The notes below the pieces were generated by a model. The model did no database searches. It saw only the letters and a program-made list of their open reading frames with translations, and was not told where the DNA came from. Position numbers and translations under genes: made by a program. From positions 124,001 through 188,000 of the forward strand of contig JALMLS010000015.1 in assembly GCA_038496445.1 (NCBI GenBank): DNA of 64,000 bases, in the 5' to 3' direction. This document shows positions 29,468 through 61,605 of this stretch, piece by piece (positions within the stretch are counted from its first letter, which is position 1; each line of letters starts with the position of its first letter). The DNA comes from Trichosphaerium sp. ATCC 40318 (lineage: Eukaryota > Protista > Tubulinea).

Positions 29468-32400
29468 TTACTCTTTTTCTTCAACTACAAATGATAGAGC
29501 AAGATCATCTGCTGCAATATTATCATCCTTTGAAAAGAAAACAGCTTCAACAATACCATCCGTAGGAGAACAAATATTGTGCTATGAAAAATAAGAAAAA
29601 AGTTACAAAGAGGTGAAAAAAAAAACAACTTCAAAAGTTCACAGCAATTAACACTTACGCTTTGTTTCATTGATACTAGTTGCATTACAACATCACCTTT
29701 CTTGACCTAAAATCATAATATTAGAAAACTTTTTGTAAAACAACAATAAACAAAGAGCGAATAGGAAGAACATATTTGAGAAGTAGAATACAAATAAAAA
29801 AACGAACAAAAACTACAACACGTACTGCATCACCAGCTTTGACAAATACATTACTTACAACACCAGGAAGTGGTGCGAGCAGAGATCCAGCTCCTTCAGG
29901 TACACTAAACAAACCAAATCATGAGATCAATGTACCAGAAATATCAACAAAAAAAAAACGTACACATATGAAGGAGTAGGAAGCTCAAGTGTAAACTCTT
30001 CACCTTCTTTAAAAATAGAGAATGTGTCTCCCTTTCTATGAATAACACTTGTCATTCTATTACCTAAAAAATACAATAAATAAAGGCACTCAAAACAACT
30101 TGTTTCCAATCTAATATCCTCTTATACTGTTTAATATACGTACCAGTATGGAAAACCTCAATACCATTCTCTGTAAGTTTAGCACGACCTTCAATCTCAT
30201 GTTCTTTGCCTTCACGATCAAATGTGCGTACACGGTACTTATTATTTGGTTTATACGTCACAAAAACGCTCTATTGTGGAAGAAAAAAAATAAGCTTCAG
30301 AAAAAAGAAACAAAGAAAGAAATCAAGTGTTTGCAGTTTCTTGAAAAAAAACTCGCGTACATGTTCAACTTCATCCTCATCTATCCATTTAATCTCACGT
30401 TCATGTTCAGTACCAAAGCGCCTACCATTAAGTTGTTGCCAAGGTGTTGGTTTGCTTGCAGTGGCTTTATTTTCACCAAGAACTAAAAAGAGCGAAGTCA
30501 TAGCCAATATATCAGTTGAAACAAGAGCCTTAGCACGTAAAAGAACTTCTGCGTGCTCCTATATTACCATTAACATAAGATATAGATATCACAACGAGAT
30601 AAAAAATAACACCGTCCAACAATAAAAAAGTAACTTACAGGAATAAAATGTGTTTGAACATTTCCTTTCTCGAACTCAGGGTGTGTAGCACAACGTCTTA
30701 GGAATGATATATTTGTGTGTGGTCCAGCAATATAGTATTGTTCTAGAGCACGTGCTAATCTATCTAATGCTGTTTGTCTTGTAGTATCCCATACTACCAG
30801 TTTCGCAATCATTGAGTCGTAGTACACGGATACCTAAAAAGTGAAGAATGTTAAATCTGAGTGAAGTCTCAGGGCTGCGTTTATAGTACCTCATCTCCTT
30901 GTAGTACACCTGTATCTACTCTCATTTTACTATCAAGTATCTTTGGTGGTTGTAACAAGTGCATTTTGCCAACACTTGGAGCAAAATCACTAACATACGG
31001 TTAACTTCAATTGCAACGGTAAAATTCCTTGTTAAACCCATACTTGTATGGGTTTTCTGCACAAATACGCGCTTCAAAAGCATGTCCATTTATCTTCAAC
31101 TCTTCTTGTTTCTTTGGTAGGGTAAAACCAGATGCAACCTATACCTGTCAGACTGGCGAGAAAACCCGAAAAGTTGGTGAAAAAAAAAAGTTTACCAGTA
31201 GTTGCCAATGAACCAAATCTGTTCCTGTGATCATCTCTGTGATTGGATGTTCTACTTGAAGCCTAGTATTCATTTCCATAAAATAAAAGGTTCCAAAGTT
31301 AGGTGATTCCTCATCAGCCTCCATGATAAATTCAACAGTACCTACAACCCATAAATACAAATAAAAACAAAAAAAAGGTAAAAAAAATGACAGATTCTTC
31401 ATACCAGCGCCTCTATAATTAACAGCACGTGCAGCATCAACAGCTGCTTTTCCCATTTTATGACGTTGTTCCTCTGATAAATGTGGCTAGTAATAAACAA
31501 TAAGCTTATCTTATAGGCACAAAAACAAGAATAGAAGCAATTAAATGATCGTACAGCTGGGGCTTCTTCTATGACTTTTTGATGTCTTCTTTGTAATGAG
31601 CAATCTCTCTCAAACAAATAGACAACGTTACCAAAGTTATCAGCAAACACTTGGATTTCCACGTGACGTGATTTTTTAATATATTTTTCAATAAGACAAC
31701 TAGAATCACCAAAAGAACTCAAAGCTTCTTCTTGACACTCTTTCAACAATCGTGGTAAATCTATTTAAAAAAAAAATTAAAGAAATGTTCAACGCCGGCC
31801 ATCTAGACACTATGTAGATAAATCGTCATTTCGTACCTTCTTCTTTGTGTACAATACGCATACCCTTTCCGCCACCACCTTTATTAGCCTTTAAGAGCCA
31901 AGGGTAGCGAGAAACTTCTTTTCCATCTATTACATCTTTTTTACCAGCAATTTTCAAAAAGTGCTCCAAGGATTGCTCTGGTCCATGATAACCAGGTACG
32001 CAAGGCACACCAGCTTTTTCCATAATTACTTTAGATTCACTACATATATTATTAGACTAATTACACTCCAAGAAAGTCAGAGAAACCGCTTTAAGCTCAA
32101 AAAACATTCTTGAAAAAAGAAAAAAAAAAAGAAAAAGAAAGTCTTACTCTTTAGAACCCATAGAATTTATAGCTGATGCAGGAGGTCCAATAAAAGTGAC
32201 ACCATTACTTGCACACTCATTTGCAAAACCAGCATTTTCTGATAAAAAGCCGTATCCAGGATGAATAGCCTTTAAGAAATTTGCGCTTTAGAGACGGAGA
32301 AATATAAAATCATAGCAAAATAGTAAACCAAACGGAAAATTATATACCTCAGCGCCCGTTTCGCGTGCTACTTCTAGTATTTTATCAACACGCAGGTAAC

Positions 32401-32846
32401 TTTCAAGCACTGGAGCTGGTCCAAGGCAAAACGCTTCATCAGCCTTTAATATGTTAGAATATGCGATTTACGCGGTTTTTTAACGTTAAGAGCGCGTTTG
32501 AACGCAAAGCCGTTGAGAAAGTGGGTCGAATAAAACAAAATAAAATGTTTTTCCAACACTTACCAATTTAACGTGTAGCGCGTTTTCATCAGCTTCTGAG
32601 TAAACTGCGACTGTCTTTACGCCTAATTTTTTTGCTGTAGAAATAACACGGCAAGCGATTTCTCCTCTGTTAGCGACTAGTATCTTTTTAAACAGCCCTG
32701 GAATATATTTTAGCGCCGTTGGCCATTTTTTAGTTGTTAGTTGAGGTGCCTTCTCTCTTTTCTGTTGCTGCCTCTGTACTGGCGTATCGCCGCGTTTGGG
32801 CCGCACGGGCACTCCGTAGTGTTGATGCTCTTAGAATCGGTAACAT
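29468..32846 (-). CDS. MCCC1: Mitochondrial biotin-dependent carboxylase alpha subunit, most likely 3-methylcrotonyl-CoA carboxylase
   Basis: Arg/Ser/Ala-rich transit peptide, [77 protein letters not shown]-terminal biotinyl domain (SMKQ). Confidence 0.8.
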
Positions 32847-33046: not shown

Positions 33047-35002
33047 TTATTCAGAAGCAATTCTCGTGTCAACACGAATAGACTTTCCATCAGTATTAGT
33101 CTTGGTATTAGAAGTTCCACCGCTTGATGACGCCGCAAGAGAAGGAAATGCAATGTCTGGGAATACAAAACTAGCCAGACTACTCGCAGCGACAACAACA
33201 ATAGCTGTAGCAACAATATGGCGTACACTAAAGTCAGTGTCACCGAAAATGAGAAGCAACATGCCAGCGATTGCGAGCGCCATTACGCAATTATAAAGAT
33301 GCATTAAAAGCCATCGTGATGATATTACACGACTCTTGACAGACCAAGTAGAATATACAACAAAAGCACCCCATCCAAGAAGCCCAAGTAAATAAATAAG
33401 TTCAAGGACAAGCCAAATCTCGTAGTACTTAGAAGTACATGTGTGGTTAACGTCTAAAGAGAGTACATCTACTTGTTCGAAGCCACTTTCATACGTGTCA
33501 ACTATGTCCCATATAACAATAAGAACGAATTGAATTGCTAACACGATGCAAAGAGATACAAGGAAAATCAATAAACCACGGATTTGTTTCTTGAATTTGT
33601 TCCTCCTTACTACAACCGTAAAGACTCTCATAATAATAGAAGCACGTCCAATAGATGCACCAAGGAACAAAGACACAGAAGCCGAAGTAAGCCATAACCG
33701 TAATTGGCATAGAACCGTTGAGCTAGGAACAAGTACCCAAATAATAGCTGCGACAAAAGCCATAATAACACCAGCGAGTAAGACGTATCCGTAAACTACC
33801 ACTTGAAGCCTTGGATGCGGTCTAAAGACCCAAATTCCAAGGACACCAATAGAGATAATAAAGAATATTACTATAATCACAACTAGCGCTATAGAGCCCG
33901 CTCCAAAATCGGTAGTTAGAATCCTTTGACCGACTAGAGATTCCCCTTGACAAGTTGCTTCGCGCATCTTGTCAACCACTGTGTCAGCAAGAGCTCGCGG
34001 AAGTGGAATATATCCCCGAGAAGAAGCAGTACTGGAGCCTTCGTCGCTTGTCAATGCCCATGTTAAGAAACGCAAAACTGTTCTTTGTTCTTGACATTGT
34101 TGATTCCAATCTGTATCTAATATTGCGTACGTAAAAGCTGCAATAGGAAATGCTCCAGGAGCATCAATATCTATGACTTCTGAAGCGAAAAAGTTTGGTT
34201 TAAAGACAGCAGAAGAAAAAGCACTCTGAGCAGATTGAGTACTATATATTACCTCTTCGCCAAGTTTGTTTACTAGTGTAGCCAATATGACCTCAGGGGT
34301 TTGCGCAAACTCCAAAAAAACGTTGTGACTGACATATCCAATAGAATAAGGTGTAACATTGATTGTTGACATTACTCCCGTATTTCCCCGAGCGAGTATC
34401 AAATTTGGATTTGTTGTTGTATTTACAGCGAAATCGCCTGATGGAGGACCATAGTTGGTTGCGAACGTTGGGTCCATACTCACAATAGCAAGTTGAAAAA
34501 TAAATGATGTTCCTGAGCCTTCTGAGCGAGCAACTGAAGTAATTGTCTGATTGATTGAAGCTAACGTTGGATTTCTCGCTACCAGACGAGCGTCGTTCCA
34601 GTGCGTTATTACTCCGCCAAAAATATCTGAAAGCTCCTTGCGGGGTATTACTACTGTAGATACTCCCGGAATATGAGTTACAACTACAACACCACCTCCC
34701 ATAATAGGATACATTTGAAGGCCTGAATTTTCAGCAACTTGTGCGTCTGTAATTTCGGAGTCTGAACCCGCCCATACAACTTCGTTAGCTGTTATAAGAG
34801 CGCGTGCAGTAGTGCTCCCAGTAGCATTATAGGTCATTGTTTCGGTATTTGAGTCGAATAGTTGAAACGAAGGTATCCAAGAGCGAATTATAGGCTCTGC
34901 AAAAGTACCGCCTGCAGCGGTGACTTGAGCGTTTGTTGACGAAAAAAATGAAATAGAAAGGAAAACCGCTAAAAACAGCATGGGGCCGTAGAAGGTCGTC
35001 AT
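33047..35002 (-). CDS. PstS-type phosphate-binding domain fused to a family-3 (class C) 7TM GPCR domain; intronless
   Basis: Signal peptide; AAGGTFAEP, YNATGS, WAGSD, IFGGVITHWND, RSEGSGTSFIF, SIGYV, FPIAAFTY (PstS); then seven hydrophobic segments with CQLRLWL, loop Cys HTCTS and Y..GLL.WG...Y.TW.V...LYN (7tm_3-like). Confidence 0.85.
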   Translation of the reverse strand: MTTFYGPMLFLAVFLSISFFSSTNAQVTAAGGTFAEPIIRSWIPSFQLFDSNTETMTYNATGSTTARALITANEVVWAGSDSEITDAQVAENSGLQMYPIMGGGVVVVTHIPGVSTVVIPRKELSDIFGGVITHWNDARLVARNPTLASINQTITSVARSEGSGTSFIFQLAIVSMDPTFATNYGPPSGDFAVNTTTNPNLILARGNTGVMSTINVTPYSIGYVSHNVFLEFAQTPEVILATLVNKLGEEVIYSTQSAQSAFSSAVFKPNFFASEVIDIDAPGAFPIAAFTYAILDTDWNQQCQEQRTVLRFLTWALTSDEGSSTASSRGYIPLPRALADTVVDKMREATCQGESLVGQRILTTDFGAGSIALVVIIVIFFIISIGVLGIWVFRPHPRLQVVVYGYVLLAGVIMAFVAAIIWVLVPSSTVLCQLRLWLTSASVSLFLGASIGRASIIMRVFTVVVRRNKFKKQIRGLLIFLVSLCIVLAIQFVLIVIWDIVDTYESGFEQVDVLSLDVNHTCTSKYYEIWLVLELIYLLGLLGWGAFVVYSTWSVKSRVISSRWLLMHLYNCVMALAIAGMLLLIFGDTDFSVRHIVATAIVVVAASSLASFVFPDIAFPSLAASSSGGTSNTKTNTDGKSIRVDTRIASE

Positions 35003-35391: not shown

Positions 35392-36966
35392 ATGGCCTCA
35401 AAGAAATCGAAAGTTAGTACGTACAGAAGTAATGTTTAACCACAAACATGAGAATAATTATTATTTTAGAGATATATCGCGCTGGTAAGGCGCCAGATTA
35501 CGCAAAAGATGGGGAAAGCAAGAAAAACCAACGTAGAGACAAAAGTACGTCTAATAGGCTTATAATATACATCAAGTTGTAATACTAGTATAGAACGCAG
35601 CTCGCGTAAACAGAGACACAGTGAAGAGCCAAAGTACGTAATTAATAATATTTACTAGCAAAACGCACTCGCACGCCTGCATAGTGCTATTATACCAACT
35701 AAATACGCCATAAATGTCAAAACTAAAATGTTTGCAGGATAGATAAGCGCTTGGCTCGCCTACAAAGAGCCCAGGCCAATGAAGATGGTGGGGGCGGTAG
35801 ATCTAGGCGACATGTGGAGGCCGAAGTAATTGTTGAAGAAGATCTCAACGAGGAGCAGCCAAAACCACAACAAACAGAAGACTTAATACAAGAAAACCAA
35901 GCAACAGAAGCGTGGGACGCAGGATCAGACAGAGCAGCCATACGAGCTAGATTGCTTGCTGAAGCCGAAAAAGAAGAGATACCTCAACAGCAAGAAGAAG
36001 GTGTCACCACAACGCTACACGTAGATGATGATGAAGACGAATCTGAAGGCGAAGAATCAAGCTCAGAGTACGTACTAAATGCTCAACTTCAAAGTAACTG
36101 TAAACTTATTAAAAACAAAGGTACACAAGCGATTCAGACGAAGACGACTTTATTTCAGAAAACACATTAATAATGCCAAAGTTTGTGCCTAAAGATAAGC
36201 GTCATACACTTGTTGAACGTGATGAAGAGATAGAGAAGCAGGAGCAATTAAAAGAATTACAAGTACAGCGTGACCAAGAAAAACGCGCAAGAACTCTTAA
36301 TTTTGTACGTTGAAGTAGTTTACTGTTACGTGAATTCTCTCTTACGCTACTACTTAGGTAAAAGATCAACTAGAGATAGAGCATGCTGCTGAAGCAGCTG
36401 CACTTGAAGAGAACGATTTGGATGATATAGATGATGCAGTGGATGATGAAGAAGCTGATCCAGAGAGGGAATACGAGTTATGGAAGATTCGTGAGTTAAA
36501 GCGTATTAAACGTGATAGAGAAGAGAGACTCGCTTGGGAGAGAGAACGCGCAGATATTGAGCGTAGACGTAAGATGACTGATGAAGAAGTAATGAGGGAA
36601 AACAAGAAAGATCCAACTAAAAACAAAAAAGCAACTGAAATGAAGTTCCTTCAAAAATACTACCACAAGGGAGCATTTTTTGGAGATGAGCTTAAGGTTA
36701 TAGAAAAAACACATGATTGGACAGCACCTACTGGTGAGGATAAGAGTCTTGATAGACGTATTCTTCCAAATGTTATGCAAGTCAAAAATTTTGGACGTGC
36801 TAGTAGAAGTAAGTATACTCATCTTACAGATCAAGATACCACATTCAAGGAGGGTGATTCTGCTTGGAATCAACGTAGCGAGTTTAGTAATAGCTATGCT
36901 TCTAAAATGGGTGGTATGAAGAAAAATTTCGATAGACCATCGAAGCGCCCTAGGTATCGTCGTTGA
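35392..36966 (+). CDS. MFAP1: Microfibrillar-associated protein 1 (spliceosome B-complex factor)
   Basis: RYIAGKAPDYA-like N-terminus; EYELWKIRELKRIKRDREER, KFLQKYYHKGAFF, LPNVMQVKNFGRASRSKYTHLTDQDTT. Confidence 0.92.
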
Positions 36967-51715: not shown

Positions 51716-52723
51716 TCATACCCAGGCTAATTTATAAAGGTCAATATGTAAAGGAAGTCCCTCTGTTTCAGCATGTGCAATCATGTAATTAACTTGTGCT
51801 GTTTCTGAACCATAGCTATCTTCGTACACAGGAGTTGGTTCCAGAGCACCGTCAAGGGTTTCAAAGTTGTCTAGTAACTTCCATTTCAATCCAAACTCAT
51901 CTAAATCAGCTATAAAATGAGGACGAGCTATTTTAGAGTCACCATGTGAATTACAAACAACGTGAAGATTATTTTCTGGTCCTTTAAAAAACTCGCAATT
52001 TTCGTATCCAACTGGAAACTGTGAGCCTCCAGGGAATATTGGATTATTGTCGTATTCCTTATAAGGAGGTAGCAAAGAGTCAGTGATATTACTATCTGGA
52101 AAATAAGCGCCTTCTTGAGCATCGAGGCGACCTGAAACGCCTTTTGTAAAGTAGATTCTTTTTCCTTTAATTTTCATAATTCTACCACTATCAAGTCTTC
52201 TCGCATTCCAAGCCTGATTCCAAGATGGAGGTTTTCCTGTTGGATAAGCAACAAGACCATGGCGAGTCCAAGGCCCGTGCATTGTTGGTGATGATGCTAC
52301 AAGTTGTGCTGACTCTTGTGTTGATGAATGGTTCTTACCAGTTCCCGTATAAAACACCCAAAACCTTCCGTTATCGTAGATGAGGGATGGCGAAAGCGTT
52401 CCAGCATAGTCAAACGCGTTTTGGTCCGTACTGCGGTTGAATAATAAGCCATGATTTGTCCATTCTCCTGTAACGTTTGTTGCGGAGTAGTAATGTAAAA
52501 AAGCGTTCCATCCACCTGGTGTTCCTTGAGATAACGGGACATAGTCCGTTACATACCAATACGTTCCATCTACGAGTATAACGCTGCTTGGGTCACGCAG
52601 ATGTCCTGTTTTGTCCGCAGCTATCGTTTTAACTCTTGTAAGTGATGGCGTAAGAAAGCACAGATAGCAAGGTATTAACACGAAGAGAATAACACGTGTT
52701 ACACGTAAGAAATGATGCATCAC
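51716..52723 (-). CDS. Secreted five-bladed beta-propeller glycoside hydrolase (GH117/GH43-like); intronless
   Basis: Hydrophobic leader; LRDPSSVI, W..HG...R...AFD...SPSLI...RFWVFYTG, GPWTR, RLDSG, ENCE acidic motifs. Confidence 0.7.
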   Translation of the reverse strand: MMHHFLRVTRVILFVLIPCYLCFLTPSLTRVKTIAADKTGHLRDPSSVILVDGTYWYVTDYVPLSQGTPGGWNAFLHYYSATNVTGEWTNHGLLFNRSTDQNAFDYAGTLSPSLIYDNGRFWVFYTGTGKNHSSTQESAQLVASSPTMHGPWTRHGLVAYPTGKPPSWNQAWNARRLDSGRIMKIKGKRIYFTKGVSGRLDAQEGAYFPDSNITDSLLPPYKEYDNNPIFPGGSQFPVGYENCEFFKGPENNLHVVCNSHGDSKIARPHFIADLDEFGLKWKLLDNFETLDGALEPTPVYEDSYGSETAQVNYMIAHAETEGLPLHIDLYKLAWV

Positions 52724-59349: not shown

Positions 59350-61605
59350 TTATTGTTGAGCAAGGGCAGAGAAATATGTCTTTACAGCATCAAGATAAGT
59401 AGTTCTGGCATGCATAGCCTTTAGTACAGTGGCATATGACCAAGTTAAATCAGTAGCACTAAATAACACATGAGAATGAAAAAATTGGAACATACTGGAC
59501 TCGTACCTAGTTGGTACTCCTGTGTTTCTATCAAGTTGTTCTGGAAGGTGGAACCCGTATTTTTCTACGTGGTATCTGATACGGTACAATACAGCATCTC
59601 CTTGGTTAGCCAAAAGAGAAGCAAACTCAAGGTGAGAGTCAATAGTGGCTTCACTATCAAGTCCAAGAACGTCACGCCAAACAGCCATGTCTTTCTCTTT
59701 TGGAATTACTTGTTCTTCGAATGCTTGAGAAGCTCCACGGTAAAATACTTGGGCCAAAGCACCAGAAGTAAGAACCCCTTAAGTCACGTGAGTAATGAAG
59801 ACTTTCAAAGAAAAAACAGTGCAAATGTGGACGTACAAGGATTGCCTCCAGCATAGTGATCACCCTCGTATCTGCCGTACATTACACCAGGAATACCATT
59901 TTGAGTATCTTGACGGTTGATGGCGAACATAGTGTTGAACAAAGTTGTAAGAGTTGAAATTGTACCGGCTACTTTAGGTCCAGTTGGTGGGAACAAATCA
60001 CCAGTGTATCTAAATTACGTTAGAAAGCGTAAAGCTATAGGAAATACAAGTACCCATCATTAAAGGCGACGATGACTGCACCATCTTTTTGACGATTAAC
60101 AGACTCAAAAACGAACTGTCCGTTCCAGTGATCGTTAAGATTGCCTTCGATGTCTTTTGCTGCAGAAGTGTATCTTGCAGCGCTTGAGGAGTCACCCATC
60201 TTAGTAGCAAGAGCAGCACCTATAAGCAAAGCACGACGTTGGTTGAATCTGTTCCAGAAGAAATCTTCACTGTGAACTTCTTCCCATAGATCACAAGTGC
60301 TCGATTGGTAGCTTGTCAACACAAAATCAAGGTCGTATTTGATAGCGCCACCATTGTACGAACTGGTTCCTGTCCACAAATACTGCTTTACGTAAGCTTG
60401 AGAAGCAGAAGATCCTTCAGCCATGAGGTTGTTGGCAAAATCAGTAAGGGTAGCAGCACGGAGTGCAGGACCATCATTCTGAGGTCTGCACCAGCCTCCA
60501 GTGTATGGACCACCATCTGGCAAGATGAATTTTGGTTCCTCACCTTGGATATCGATTAGTTGAATACTTTAGAAAGGTATGGGAAGGTATGTAAGGTACA
60601 GAAAGGTACTCCGAAAAGTTTTCTCAAATCTAAAGTTTTAACGTAAAGTGGTAACACGTCACGTGCGTGAAAAGTTATTTTTCATTGTAATGTGACATTG
60701 TTTTGGTTTTGTGCATTAAAAAAGAAGTTCCGTTGATAAAATTGGGAACTGTATGCATAAAAGTGCGGGCAAATAGTACGTACGAACATCGATGCCGTTA
60801 GGGTCATTTAGTACTTGTTTTCTAAGTACCCATTGGGTGTAATCCTTCATTTTTGGTTCGTAAGTTGTAAAATCTGTCAATATCATTAAAGCTCTCATTG
60901 TTAGAGCGCCATCACGCATCCAGTGGTAATAGTAACTACCACCTGGAGTATTGTTATCGGGGCTAGCAACTACACCTCCCTTTCCTAAAACCAAATTGAG
61001 CAAACCAGGTAAAACAATAAAAATAAGGAAAGAAGACCAACTTTGTGTATCGAAAAGTTAGCTAAGAAAAAAAAAACTACAAAGAGTTTCAAAATAAACT
61101 AGGAGGTACCTTGGATATCAATGTTAGCCAAGAAGAATCCCATCATTGTGTTTACTTCACTGGTATTGAAAGGTGGTCCGGATGGAATAGGTACAGGAGC
61201 AATTGGTGCCTGAGCTGGGTGATAACACCATGGGATGGCTGAGTTATGACTAAAAAAAAAGACTTTGTGTAAGTAAAAGAGGAAACAAGTGTGGACGAAA
61301 TTCTCAAGGCGCACAAACGATTTTAGCGAAAGCGGAGCAATTTTACGTAATAATTTCAAATGTAGAAATTTCTGCGTACCCTTCTGGTACCCAGCAGCAT
61401 CCAGACGCCAAACATTGTTGTTGTGTAGTGCCTGAGTGCCCGCAGTCAATTTTAGAGGCATTTGCCACTTGACAGTTCATTACGTCATTACTAGGCCTAG
61501 CGCTACTATAATAGGCCATTAATTAGAAAAATAACTGTAGATATGTACGTACGAAGTGCTAATCGCTAGTAACAGCACCGCCACAAGAAGAGTTGTTCTT
61601 ATCAT
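59350..61605 (-). CDS. Secreted GH15 glucoamylase with N-terminal trefoil (P-type) domain
   Basis: Signal peptide; CQVANASKIDCGHSGTTQQQCLASGCCWVPEGHNSAIPWCY; GH15 motifs VVASP, YYYHWMRDGAL, GEPKF, WCRPQNDGPALRA, DLWEE, GRYEGDHY, LPEQLDR, LTWSYA. Confidence 0.9.

What the first reader, a model, noticed from the sequence alone, without database searches (positions are those of the whole stretch)
33047..35002. Candidate phosphate-sensing GPCR: PstS domain fused to a class C 7TM domain
Seen: one 651-aa ORF with a signal peptide, a ~325-aa PstS-like domain and a seven-helix membrane domain. Known: E. coli PstS binds phosphate through Thr10/Phe11, Ser38, Asp56 and the Arg135-x-Asp137-x-Ser139-Gly140-Thr141 loop. 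Here these align to GGTF, TGS, GSD and RSEGSGT, so by eye all are kept except Asp to Glu. Canonical class C GPCRs (mGluR, GABA-B, CaSR) use a type I periplasmic-binding Venus flytrap domain, whereas PstS is a type II fold normally serving an ABC transporter. Inference: a bacterial-type phosphate-binding module has been recruited as the ligand sensor of a GPCR, giving direct sensing of external phosphate or a phosphorylated ligand. I know of no characterised receptor with this architecture but cannot exclude uncharacterised database entries.
Basis: partly seen in the sequence, partly recalled or inferred. Interest (0 to 1): 0.92.

Follow-up and report, generated by a model that had tools for sequence, protein, structure and literature searches.

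The report
Amoeba receptor with phosphate-binding head
This is a real, intact protist gene in which a bacterial-type phosphate-binding domain sits on top of a GABA-B-like G-protein-coupled receptor, probably to sense outside phosphate; the design is already listed in papers and databases, but nobody has tested it.

Summary
Window 33047-35002 (-) is one unbroken 651-codon ORF. It encodes a likely signal peptide, a PstS-type domain (Pfam PBP_like_2, E 1e-20; PstS TIGR00975, E 2e-57) and a class C 7TM domain (7tm_3, E 2e-18).

All eight phosphate-contacting residues of E. coli PstS align unchanged; only Asp137 becomes Glu. The AlphaFold ectodomain superposes on phosphate-bound PstS (TM 0.89-0.90). 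The membrane half hits only class C GPCRs, GABA-B best.

At least 48 representative proteins share the fusion, in Amoebozoa and Rhizaria; papers add a chytrid and Plasmodiophora. Several come from transcriptomes, so relatives express it as one transcript.

The design is not new. Krishnan 2012 lists PBP_like_2 + 7tm_3 in Spizellomyces. Rolfe 2016 describes four such genes in Plasmodiophora and calls them phosphate transporters. Atlas clusters already carry the name. Ligand and signalling remain untested everywhere.

This scan's first readers noted two more PstS-class C fusions on other DNA of this genome.

Verdict: a new member of a catalogued but uncharacterised kind, and a good candidate phosphate receptor. 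Moderate interest.

The parts
33047..35002 (-). Whole coding sequence, 651 codons plus TAA stop, with no intron
   Evidence: ORF list. It aligns end to end with full-length homologues without unexplained inserts. An in-frame TAG lies 9 nt upstream of the ATG.
34928..35002 (-). Likely signal peptide, residues 1-25 (cleavage after TNA)
   Evidence: Hydrophobic N-terminus read from the sequence. pLDDT is low. It aligns with the E. coli PstS leader. Not tested with a predictor.
33953..34927 (-). PstS-type (type II substrate-binding protein) ectodomain, residues 26-350
   Evidence: PF12849 E 1e-20. TIGR00975 E 2.4e-57. PDB PstS E 1e-33. Foldseek to 1a54, 1quk and 1ixi gives TM 0.89-0.90, rmsd 2.4-2.6 A.
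34901..34906 (-). T33-F34, equivalents of PstS Thr10 and Phe11
   Evidence: Alignment; coordinates checked.
34814..34816 (-). S63, equivalent of PstS Ser38
   Evidence: Ser in 16 of 17 fusion homologues with a residue at this position.
34760..34762 (-). D81, equivalent of PstS Asp56, the residue that selects protonated phosphate over sulfate (established knowledge)
   Evidence: Asp or Glu in 20 of 20 fusion homologues with a residue at this position.
34508..34528 (-). R159-S-E-G-S-G-T165 loop, equivalent of PstS Arg135-x-Asp137-x-Ser139-Gly140-Thr141, with Asp137 replaced by Glu
   Evidence: Among fusion homologues Arg is kept in 26 of 27, Ser in 21 of 29, Gly in 23 of 29 and Thr in 24 of 29.
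34094..34096 (-). C303, inferred disulfide partner of C351
   Evidence: Cys in 27 of 29 fusion homologues but only 12 of 58 short solo PstS. The disulfide itself is inferred.
33902..33952 (-). Short stalk, residues 351-367, starting with the invariant C351. There is no cysteine-rich (NCD3G) domain.
   Evidence: C351 is invariant in 36 aligned sequences and in 29 of 29 fusions. Pfam shows no NCD3G.
33131..33901 (-). GABA-B-like class C seven-helix domain plus helix 8, residues 368-624
   Evidence: PF00003 E 1.6e-18. PDB GABA-B receptor E 9e-10, with matching CQxRxWL, ECL2 Cys and YN motifs. Domain model pLDDT 88.6, pTM 0.84. All top 50 Foldseek hits are class C GPCRs, TMq 0.56-0.73.
33707..33709 (-). 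C432 at the top of TM3, inferred partner of the ECL2 cysteine
   Evidence: Invariant in both alignments. Aligns with the GABA-B TM3 Cys.
33437..33439 (-). C522 in the ECL2 beta-hairpin
   Evidence: Invariant in the TMD alignment. Aligns with the GABA-B ECL2 Cys.
33050..33130 (-). Short Ser/Thr-rich cytoplasmic tail, residues 625-651
   Evidence: Sequence; low pLDDT.

Best explanation
This is an intronless nuclear gene of an intron-rich protist, probably a discosean amoeba. It encodes a cell-surface class C (GABA-B-like) receptor whose ligand-binding head is a PstS-type phosphate-binding protein instead of the usual type I Venus flytrap.

Proposed mechanism:
1. After signal-peptide cleavage, the two-lobed PstS domain faces outward.
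2. Inorganic phosphate is clamped between the lobes by T33, F34, S63, D81, R159, S163, G164 and T165.
3. A family-specific C303-C351 disulfide fixes the start of a 17-residue stalk to the binding domain.
4. Lobe closure is thereby passed to the seven-helix domain, which has the class C TM3-ECL2 cysteine pair C432/C522.
5. The seven-helix domain then switches a heterotrimeric G protein or another intracellular partner, probably as a dimer.

The likely use is sensing external phosphate for foraging, chemotaxis or phosphate-starvation responses.

Shown: gene integrity, both domain identities, predicted folds, conservation of ligand residues and of membrane-domain motifs across a wide family, and single transcripts in relatives.

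Inferred: the ligand, the disulfides, dimerisation, G-protein coupling and the physiological role.
For: - The ORF and its improbability by chance.
- Both Pfam domains score above their gathering cut-offs. The PstS equivalog model gives E 2.4e-57.
- All eight PstS phosphate ligands are kept. They are largely kept across 29 fusion homologues, at rates approaching those of bacterial PstS.
- The full-length AF2 model has pLDDT 84. Its ectodomain superposes on liganded PstS at TM 0.89-0.90.
- The TMD model has pLDDT 88.6, and all top 50 hits are class C GPCRs.
- GABA-B sequence motifs and the Cys pair are conserved.
- 48 representative proteins carry both domains. Of the 36 aligned, 36 match 7tm_3 and 33 match PBP_like_2.
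- Transcriptome-derived members come from Amoeba proteus, Sappinia, Flabellula, Stygamoeba, Mayorella and Euglypha.
- Homologues sit in eukaryotic genomic contexts as single ORFs.
- The same PstS clade is also fused to receptor guanylate cyclases and a TRP-like channel. That argues it serves as a sensor module in eukaryotes.
- The neighbours are ordinary eukaryotic genes (MFAP1, biotin carboxylase) and GC3 is 31%, so this is not contamination.
Against: - No binding, signalling or expression data exist for this protein or any homologue in the papers I could search.
- TIGR00975 scores 194.4, below its trusted cut-off of 205.
- Asp137 is Glu.
- The acidic TM6 residue that most family members have two positions before the conserved RW (consensus ExRW) is Ser here. 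This residue aligns with the Asp that precedes the conserved Arg in GABA-B1.
- An N-glycosylation sequon (N59) lies four residues from ligand residue S63.
- How closure of a type II fold would drive a class C dimer is unknown.
- pTM of the full model is only 0.65, so the relative placement of the domains is not reliable.
- Transcription in this organism is untested.
Confidence: 0.6

Rival explanations
1. The protein is a real receptor, but its ligand is not orthophosphate. It could be another oxyanion (arsenate, sulfate, vanadate, pyrophosphate or polyphosphate) or a phosphorylated organic molecule, for example one released by prey bacteria.
For: The PstS equivalog model scores just below its cut-off. 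Asp137 is Glu here and varies across fusion homologues (Asp 16, Glu 5, Gly 4). Identity to bacterial PstS is only 27-36%. Dictyostelium's class C receptor fAR1 shows that amoeba class C heads can bind unexpected ligands (title and abstract of PMC5969738, seen).
Against: All eight direct ligand residues are kept, including Asp56/D81. By established PstS knowledge that residue disfavours fully ionised sulfate. PstS Asp137 mutants were still crystallised with phosphate (PDB titles 1quk, 1qui, 1qul). The closed PstS pocket leaves no room for large organic groups (established knowledge, not tested here).
Confidence: 0.2
2. The protein is not a signalling receptor. It is a membrane-anchored phosphate scavenger or a transporter, the reading that Rolfe et al. 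2016 gave the Plasmodiophora homologues. In this view the seven helices serve as an anchor or a pore.
For: Rolfe 2016 calls the PBP_like_2-7tm3 proteins phosphate transporters. Eukaryotes also have multi-PstS surface proteins without any 7TM domain, which look like scavengers: Chromosphaera P0006 and Entosiphon P0009.
Against: The membrane domain is homologous in sequence and predicted fold to class C GPCRs only. I know of no class C domain that transports solutes (own knowledge). About a dozen membrane-domain residues are invariant or nearly so across the family, including GPCR-typical TM3, ECL2 and TM6 motifs. That is more than an anchor would need. The same PstS clade is fused to guanylate cyclase signalling domains.
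Confidence: 0.1
3. The gene is an untranscribed, decaying or mis-joined feature: a dead retrocopy, or two genes that merely abut.
For: It is the only long intronless ORF in an intron-rich window. The exact protein is absent from the 15-billion-protein collection.
Against: The 651 codons have no stop or frameshift (P about 2e-20). Functional residues in both halves are conserved. Both domains model with high confidence. Homologues in other eukaryotic contigs are also single unbroken ORFs. A small 13-Mb contig set from 2015, guessed to be RNA, holds 72% of the words of a stretch that is 75% ORF. Relatives' transcripts span both domains.
Confidence: 0.05

Closest known systems
Catalogued PBP_like_2 + 7tm_3 proteins: Spizellomyces punctatus SPPG_06488 (Krishnan et al. 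2012, PMC3251606) and four Plasmodiophora brassicae genes (Rolfe et al. 2016, PMC4815078)
   Same: The same two Pfam domains in the same order. Rolfe showed by RNA that they are single coding regions and inferred phosphate as the solute.
   Different: Those papers only list the architecture or call it a transporter. No residue-level, structural or functional analysis is given. The window protein comes from a different lineage (probably Amoebozoa), and the full-length homologues I aligned share only about 20-30% identity with it; those published proteins were not among them.
E. coli PstS, the periplasmic phosphate-binding protein of the PstSCAB ABC importer (PDB 1ixh, 2abh, 9k3s)
   Same: The fold (TM 0.89-0.90) and all eight phosphate-ligand residues.
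   Different: It is covalently tethered to a 7TM receptor rather than docking on PstC/PstA. It has a eukaryote-clade Cys303/Cys351 pair and N-glycosylation sequons. Asp137 is Glu. It scores just below the equivalog cut-off.
Metabotropic GABA-B receptor (class C GPCR without a cysteine-rich domain)
   Same: Closest membrane domain by sequence (E 9e-10) and by predicted fold. Shares the TM3 CQxRxWL motif, the ECL2 Cys and the TM6 YN motif, and has a short stalk with no NCD3G domain.
   Different: The head is a type II PstS fold, not a type I ANF_receptor flytrap. There is no evidence for a heterodimer partner. The TM6 acidic residue that most family members have (consensus ExRW) is Ser in this copy.
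Class C GPCRs of early fungi with type II substrate-binding heads (Seppala et al. 2016, PMC5168858; Krishnan 2012)
   Same: The same principle: a bacterial-type type II binding domain replaces the ANF flytrap on a class C chassis.
   Different: The gut-fungal heads resemble sugar-binding proteins. This one is a phosphate binder.
Human calcium-sensing receptor acting as a phosphate sensor (Centeno et al. 2019, PMC6795806)
   Same: A class C GPCR whose ectodomain responds directly to extracellular phosphate (title and abstract).
   Different: CaSR uses anion sites in a type I flytrap, and phosphate is a modulator of a Ca2+ receptor. Here a dedicated high-affinity-type phosphate pocket would be the primary ligand site.

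Membership tests
PstS phosphate-binding protein family (Pfam PBP_like_2; NCBIfam TIGR00975) | Profile match above the curated cut-off | tested here: inconclusive
   PF12849 scores 75 bits against a cut-off of 27, which is met. The TIGR00975 equivalog scores 194.4 against 205, E 2.4e-57, which is just missed.
PstS phosphate-binding protein family (Pfam PBP_like_2; NCBIfam TIGR00975) | Two-lobed type II substrate-binding fold superposable on PstS | tested here: met
   Foldseek gives TM 0.89-0.90 (normalised to target) and rmsd 2.4-2.6 A to 1a54, 1quk, 1ixi and 8ods. The model's pLDDT is mostly above 85 in residues 30-350.
PstS phosphate-binding protein family (Pfam PBP_like_2; NCBIfam TIGR00975) | Phosphate-ligand residues Thr10, Phe11, Ser38, Asp56, Arg135, Ser139, Gly140, Thr141 | tested here: met
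   All eight align identically. The Arg135 partner Asp137 is Glu.
PstS phosphate-binding protein family (Pfam PBP_like_2; NCBIfam TIGR00975) | Acts as a free or lipid-anchored partner of a PstCAB ABC importer | tested here: not met
   The domain is fused in one ORF to a 7TM receptor domain. So it is a PstS-family domain, not a PstS transporter subunit.
PstS phosphate-binding protein family (Pfam PBP_like_2; NCBIfam TIGR00975) | Actual binding of orthophosphate | not testable with these tools
   Needs ITC or thermal shift on the expressed ectodomain.
Class C (glutamate/GABA-B family) GPCR | 7tm_3 profile match above the gathering score | tested here: met
   PF00003 scores 67.8 bits against 33.5 and covers 243 of 251 profile positions.
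Class C (glutamate/GABA-B family) GPCR | Seven-helix bundle with the class C fold | tested here: met
   Seven helices, an ECL2 hairpin and a helix 8. All top 50 PDB matches are class C receptors, TMq 0.56-0.73.
Class C (glutamate/GABA-B family) GPCR | Conserved TM3-ECL2 cysteine pair | tested here: met
   C432 and C522 are invariant in 42 sequences and align with the GABA-B cysteines. Bond formation itself is inferred.
Class C (glutamate/GABA-B family) GPCR | Type I (ANF_receptor) Venus flytrap ectodomain | tested here: not met
   There is no ANF_receptor hit. The ectodomain is PBP_like_2/PstS, a type II fold.
Class C (glutamate/GABA-B family) GPCR | Cysteine-rich NCD3G domain (absent in GABA-B too) | tested here: not met
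   No NCD3G hit. The stalk is only 17 residues long.
Class C (glutamate/GABA-B family) GPCR | Obligate dimerisation and G-protein coupling | not testable with these tools
   No multimer prediction or assay was available. A G-alpha gene in this genome is mentioned only in an unchecked scan note.
Catalogued PBP_like_2-7tm_3 fusion receptors of protists and early fungi | Signal peptide, PBP_like_2, short stalk and 7tm_3 in one polypeptide, with homologues of the same layout | tested here: met
   48 representative proteins carry both domains. Of the 36 aligned, 36 match 7tm_3 and 33 match PBP_like_2. Atlas clusters are named for this pair. Literature.

The most novel reading that the evidence does not exclude
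The PstS head is not a one-off graft. It may be a general, old eukaryotic module for sensing extracellular phosphate, plugged into at least three different signalling chassis:
- class C GPCRs, as here;
- receptor guanylate cyclases with a kinase-homology domain, including a multi-exon gene on a 73-Mb chromosome of a eukaryotic assembly;
- Ephrin_rec_like/TRP-like channel proteins.

Together these would form an unrecognised family of direct phosphate receptors across protists, and possibly in an animal-sized genome.
Probability: 0.3. Interest if true: 0.7.

Novelty: new member of a known kind. Interest (0 to 1): 0.4.

Why it matters
How eukaryotic cells detect phosphate outside the cell is still poorly understood. 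The best animal candidate is a side activity of the calcium-sensing receptor (PMC6795806).

A class C receptor built on a dedicated, PstS-grade phosphate pocket would be a clean, testable example of direct extracellular phosphate sensing. It could also be a ready-made scaffold for phosphate biosensors.

This copy is compact and intronless, has every ligand residue in place and models well, so it is a convenient member to express.

The value lies in characterising the family. The architecture itself has been in the literature since 2012.

Tried and rejected
**Searches that gave little or nothing**
- The word-indexed protein search with the full protein found only four PstS-only proteins. With the membrane region it found nothing. 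The exhaustive representative search was needed to find the family.
Transcript structure here is therefore untested.
- The closest homologue, P0005 (48% identity, partial), had no contig on record.
- Supplements of Hall et al. 2023, which lists PBP_like_2 among the domains it abbreviates, were not held.
- Paper searches for PstS with GPCR or guanylate cyclase terms gave nothing relevant.

**Ideas rejected**
- Recent bacterial transfer or contamination. The PstS head lies in a long-protein clade (identified members eukaryotic) split from short bacterial-type PstS with 100% SH-aLRT support. GC3 is 31%, and the neighbours are MFAP1 and biotin carboxylase.
- Two abutting genes. This is one ORF, and homologues and transcripts span both halves.
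- A tandem paralogue in the window. There is none.

**Not resolved**
- The organism. Atlas taxa and earlier scan notes point to a discosean or marine amoeba.
Full report
**1. Observation**

Window 33047-35002 (minus strand) is a single ATG-to-TAA ORF of 651 codons. It is the only ORF above 335 aa in the whole 64-kb window, which otherwise shows the short split ORFs of an intron-rich eukaryote. At the window's base composition, 651 stop-free codons have a chance of about 2e-20. An in-frame TAG lies 9 nt upstream of the ATG.

The N-terminus (residues 1-25, ending TNA) looks like a signal peptide. It lines up with the E. coli PstS leader, so the mature protein starts just before the GGTF motif. 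No signal-peptide predictor was available.

**2. Domain identity**

Pfam gives PBP_like_2 at residues 24-318 (75 bits) and 7tm_3 at 370-615 (67.8 bits). Both are well above their gathering scores. NCBIfam's PstS equivalog TIGR00975 covers residues 27-344 at 194.4 bits, E 2.4e-57, just under its cut-off of 205.

Against PDB sequences the best matches are E. coli PstS (E 1.3e-33) for the head and GABA-B receptors (E 6e-9 to 9e-10) for the membrane half. mGlu2 matches more weakly.

**3. Binding site**

The HMMER alignment pairs query T33/F34, S63, D81 and R159-S-E-G-S-G-T165 with PstS Thr10/Phe11, Ser38, Asp56 and Arg135-x-Asp137-x-Ser139-Gly140-Thr141.

Across 29 fusion homologues these positions are largely kept:

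| PstS position | Kept in fusion homologues |
|---|---|
| Arg135 | 26 of 27 |
| Ser139 | 21 of 29 |
| Gly140 | 23 of 29 |
| Thr141 | 24 of 29 |
| Asp56 (Asp or Glu) | 20 of 20 |
| Ser38 | 16 of 17 |

These rates approach, but do not reach, the near-invariance seen in 58 short solo PstS.

**4. Structure prediction**

The full-length AlphaFold2 model, built on a 36-sequence alignment, has mean pLDDT 84.3. Its head superposes on phosphate-bound PstS structures (1a54, 1quk, 1ixi, 8ods) with TM 0.89-0.90 and rmsd 2.4-2.6 A.

It has seven helices at 368-392, 399-423, 429-466, 476-501, 527-551, 560-586 and 590-612. It also has an ECL2 beta-hairpin at 505-523 and a helix 8.

The membrane half was folded alone on a 42-sequence alignment and reaches pLDDT 88.6, pTM 0.84. 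All 50 best Foldseek PDB matches are class C receptors: GABA-B, mGlu, CaSR and GPR156, with TMq 0.56-0.73.

The relative orientation of head and bundle is not reliable, because the full model's pTM is 0.65.

**5. Family-specific features**

The protein has only six cysteines. Four of them are extracellular and conserved.

- C432 (top of TM3) and C522 (ECL2) are invariant and align with the GABA-B pair.
- C351 is invariant and C303 nearly so.
- The C303/C351 pair is present in 27 of 29 and 29 of 29 fusion proteins, but in only 12 of 58 short solo PstS.

I infer a disulfide that fixes the start of the 17-residue stalk to the binding domain. This would be functionally analogous to the lobe-to-CRD disulfide of mGlu and CaSR receptors (own knowledge, not tested).

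There is no NCD3G domain, as in GABA-B. In this copy the acidic TM6 residue that most family members have (consensus ExRW) is Ser. It aligns with the Asp that precedes the conserved Arg in GABA-B1. Five N-glycosylation sequons are present, one of them (N59) close to S63.

**6. Relatives**

The exhaustive search of 1.84 billion representatives gave 4710 hits. Re-scoring the listed proteins with each half of the query showed 48 with both domains. Of the 36 I aligned, 36 match 7tm_3 and 33 match PBP_like_2 at Pfam level.

Named members are transcriptome proteins:
- Amoebozoa: Amoeba proteus, Sappinia pedata, Flabellula baltica, Stygamoeba regulata, Mayorella sp.
- Rhizaria: Euglypha rotunda.

The ESM Atlas holds clusters automatically named for the 7tm_3/PBP_like_2 pair. 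One has 51 members (commonest Discosea), another 52 (commonest Chlorophyta).

Two homologues sit on long metagenomic contigs among eukaryotic genes (Ufd2/U-box, Plus-3, Ras, RabGAP). There too each is a single unbroken ORF, in one locus next to fragmented, intron-bearing neighbours.

No paralogue lies in this window. First-reader notes of this scan report two more PstS-class C fusions and a six-domain PstS array elsewhere in the same genome. These notes are unchecked.

**7. Origin of the head**

I built a quick maximum-likelihood tree of 146 PstS domains. It splits with 100% SH-aLRT support into two clades.

- One clade has 70 domains, mostly from short solo proteins. One member I checked lies on a 622-kb bacterial contig.
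- The other has 76 domains. It holds every fusion protein, the multi-PstS giants (Chromosphaera perkinsii and Entosiphon sulcatum) and long proteins.

Pfam shows that several of those long proteins are PstS + kinase-homology + guanylate cyclase, or PstS + Ephrin_rec_like + TRP. One cyclase form is a multi-exon gene on a 73-Mb chromosome.

So the head belongs to an old clade of receptor modules whose identified members are eukaryotic. GC3 of 31% and the housekeeping neighbours (MFAP1, biotin carboxylase) argue against recent transfer or contamination.

Two caveats apply. The sample is the top 150 hits only, and most rows lack taxon labels. A single origin of the GPCR fusion is neither shown nor excluded.

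**8. What is known**

- Krishnan et al. 2012 list PBP_like_2 on a 7tm_3 receptor in Spizellomyces (SPPG_06488), among other type II heads.
- Rolfe et al. 2016 describe four PBP_like_2-7tm3 genes in Plasmodiophora. [quoted passage not shown]
- Seppala et al. [quoted passage not shown]
- Hall et al. 2023 list PBP_like_2 among the domains they abbreviate in a paper on amoebozoan GPCRs.

I found no paper with binding, structural or signalling data on a PstS-headed receptor. The nearest functional precedent is phosphate acting on the human calcium-sensing receptor (PMC6795806).

**9. Mechanism and odds**

My best reading, at confidence about 0.6, is a phosphate-gated class C receptor as set out under Best explanation.

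Rivals:
- another anion or phospho-ligand (0.2);
- a scavenger or transporter rather than a receptor (0.1);
- a silent or mis-joined gene (0.05).

**10. Limits**

I worked beside that stretch and sent none of it to any search tool afterwards.

The run search found a small 2015 contig set, guessed to be RNA, that holds 72% of the words of a stretch that is 75% ORF. This is suggestive only. The organism was not identified beyond "probably a discosean or marine amoeba".

**11. Verdict**

Novelty is that of a new member of a catalogued but uncharacterised architecture. Interest is moderate (0.4), mainly as a clean experimental entry point to direct extracellular phosphate sensing.

Noticed in passing
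P0058, P0074, P0104, P0070 (representative proteins); L006:6001-14513: PstS-type ectodomains from the same clade are fused to a kinase-homology domain plus a guanylate cyclase domain. This is the layout of natriuretic-peptide-type receptor cyclases, with PstS in place of the ANF_receptor flytrap. One is a multi-exon gene on a 73-Mb chromosome of assembly GCA_041381155.1; the organism was not resolved. I found no paper describing this.
   Followed up: partly
P0038, P0059, P0079 (representative proteins): PstS domains are also joined to Ephrin_rec_like repeats and, in P0038, to a TRP-type channel region. This is a third receptor chassis carrying the same head.
   Followed up: no
P0006 (Chromosphaera perkinsii, 2386 aa), P0009 (Entosiphon sulcatum, 1933 aa), P0014: These are giant eukaryotic proteins with four tandem PstS domains and no 7TM domain. 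They may be surface phosphate scavengers. A scan note reports a six-domain array in this genome too.
   Followed up: partly
window 33047-35002; L001:10001-11722; L003:10001-11890: The PstS-GPCR gene is intronless here and in two homologous eukaryotic loci, although neighbouring genes are fragmented by introns. A retrocopy origin or selection for intron loss was not examined.
   Followed up: partly
window 31148-32812 (-): A multi-exon biotin-carboxylase-type gene (Biotin_carb_N exon at 32486-32812) starts only about 200 bp downstream of the receptor's stop codon.
   Followed up: no
window 35751-36966 (+): A divergently oriented gene lies about 750 bp upstream of the receptor's ATG, and its exon at 36418-36963 is a clear MFAP1 spliceosome-protein domain (E 1e-49). 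This points to a shared bidirectional promoter region.
   Followed up: partly
window 51719-52723 (-) and 60038-60523 (-): A 335-aa ORF has weak GH43/GH32-like matches and a hydrophobic N-terminus. A separate exon encodes part of a GH15 glucoamylase.
   Followed up: no
L004:5001-8757: On a 622-kb bacterial contig, the short PstS closest to the query (P0048) lies directly upstream of a CHASE4-PAS histidine kinase and a response regulator, not next to pstCAB. It may be a bacterial phosphate-binding protein working with a two-component sensor.
   Followed up: no
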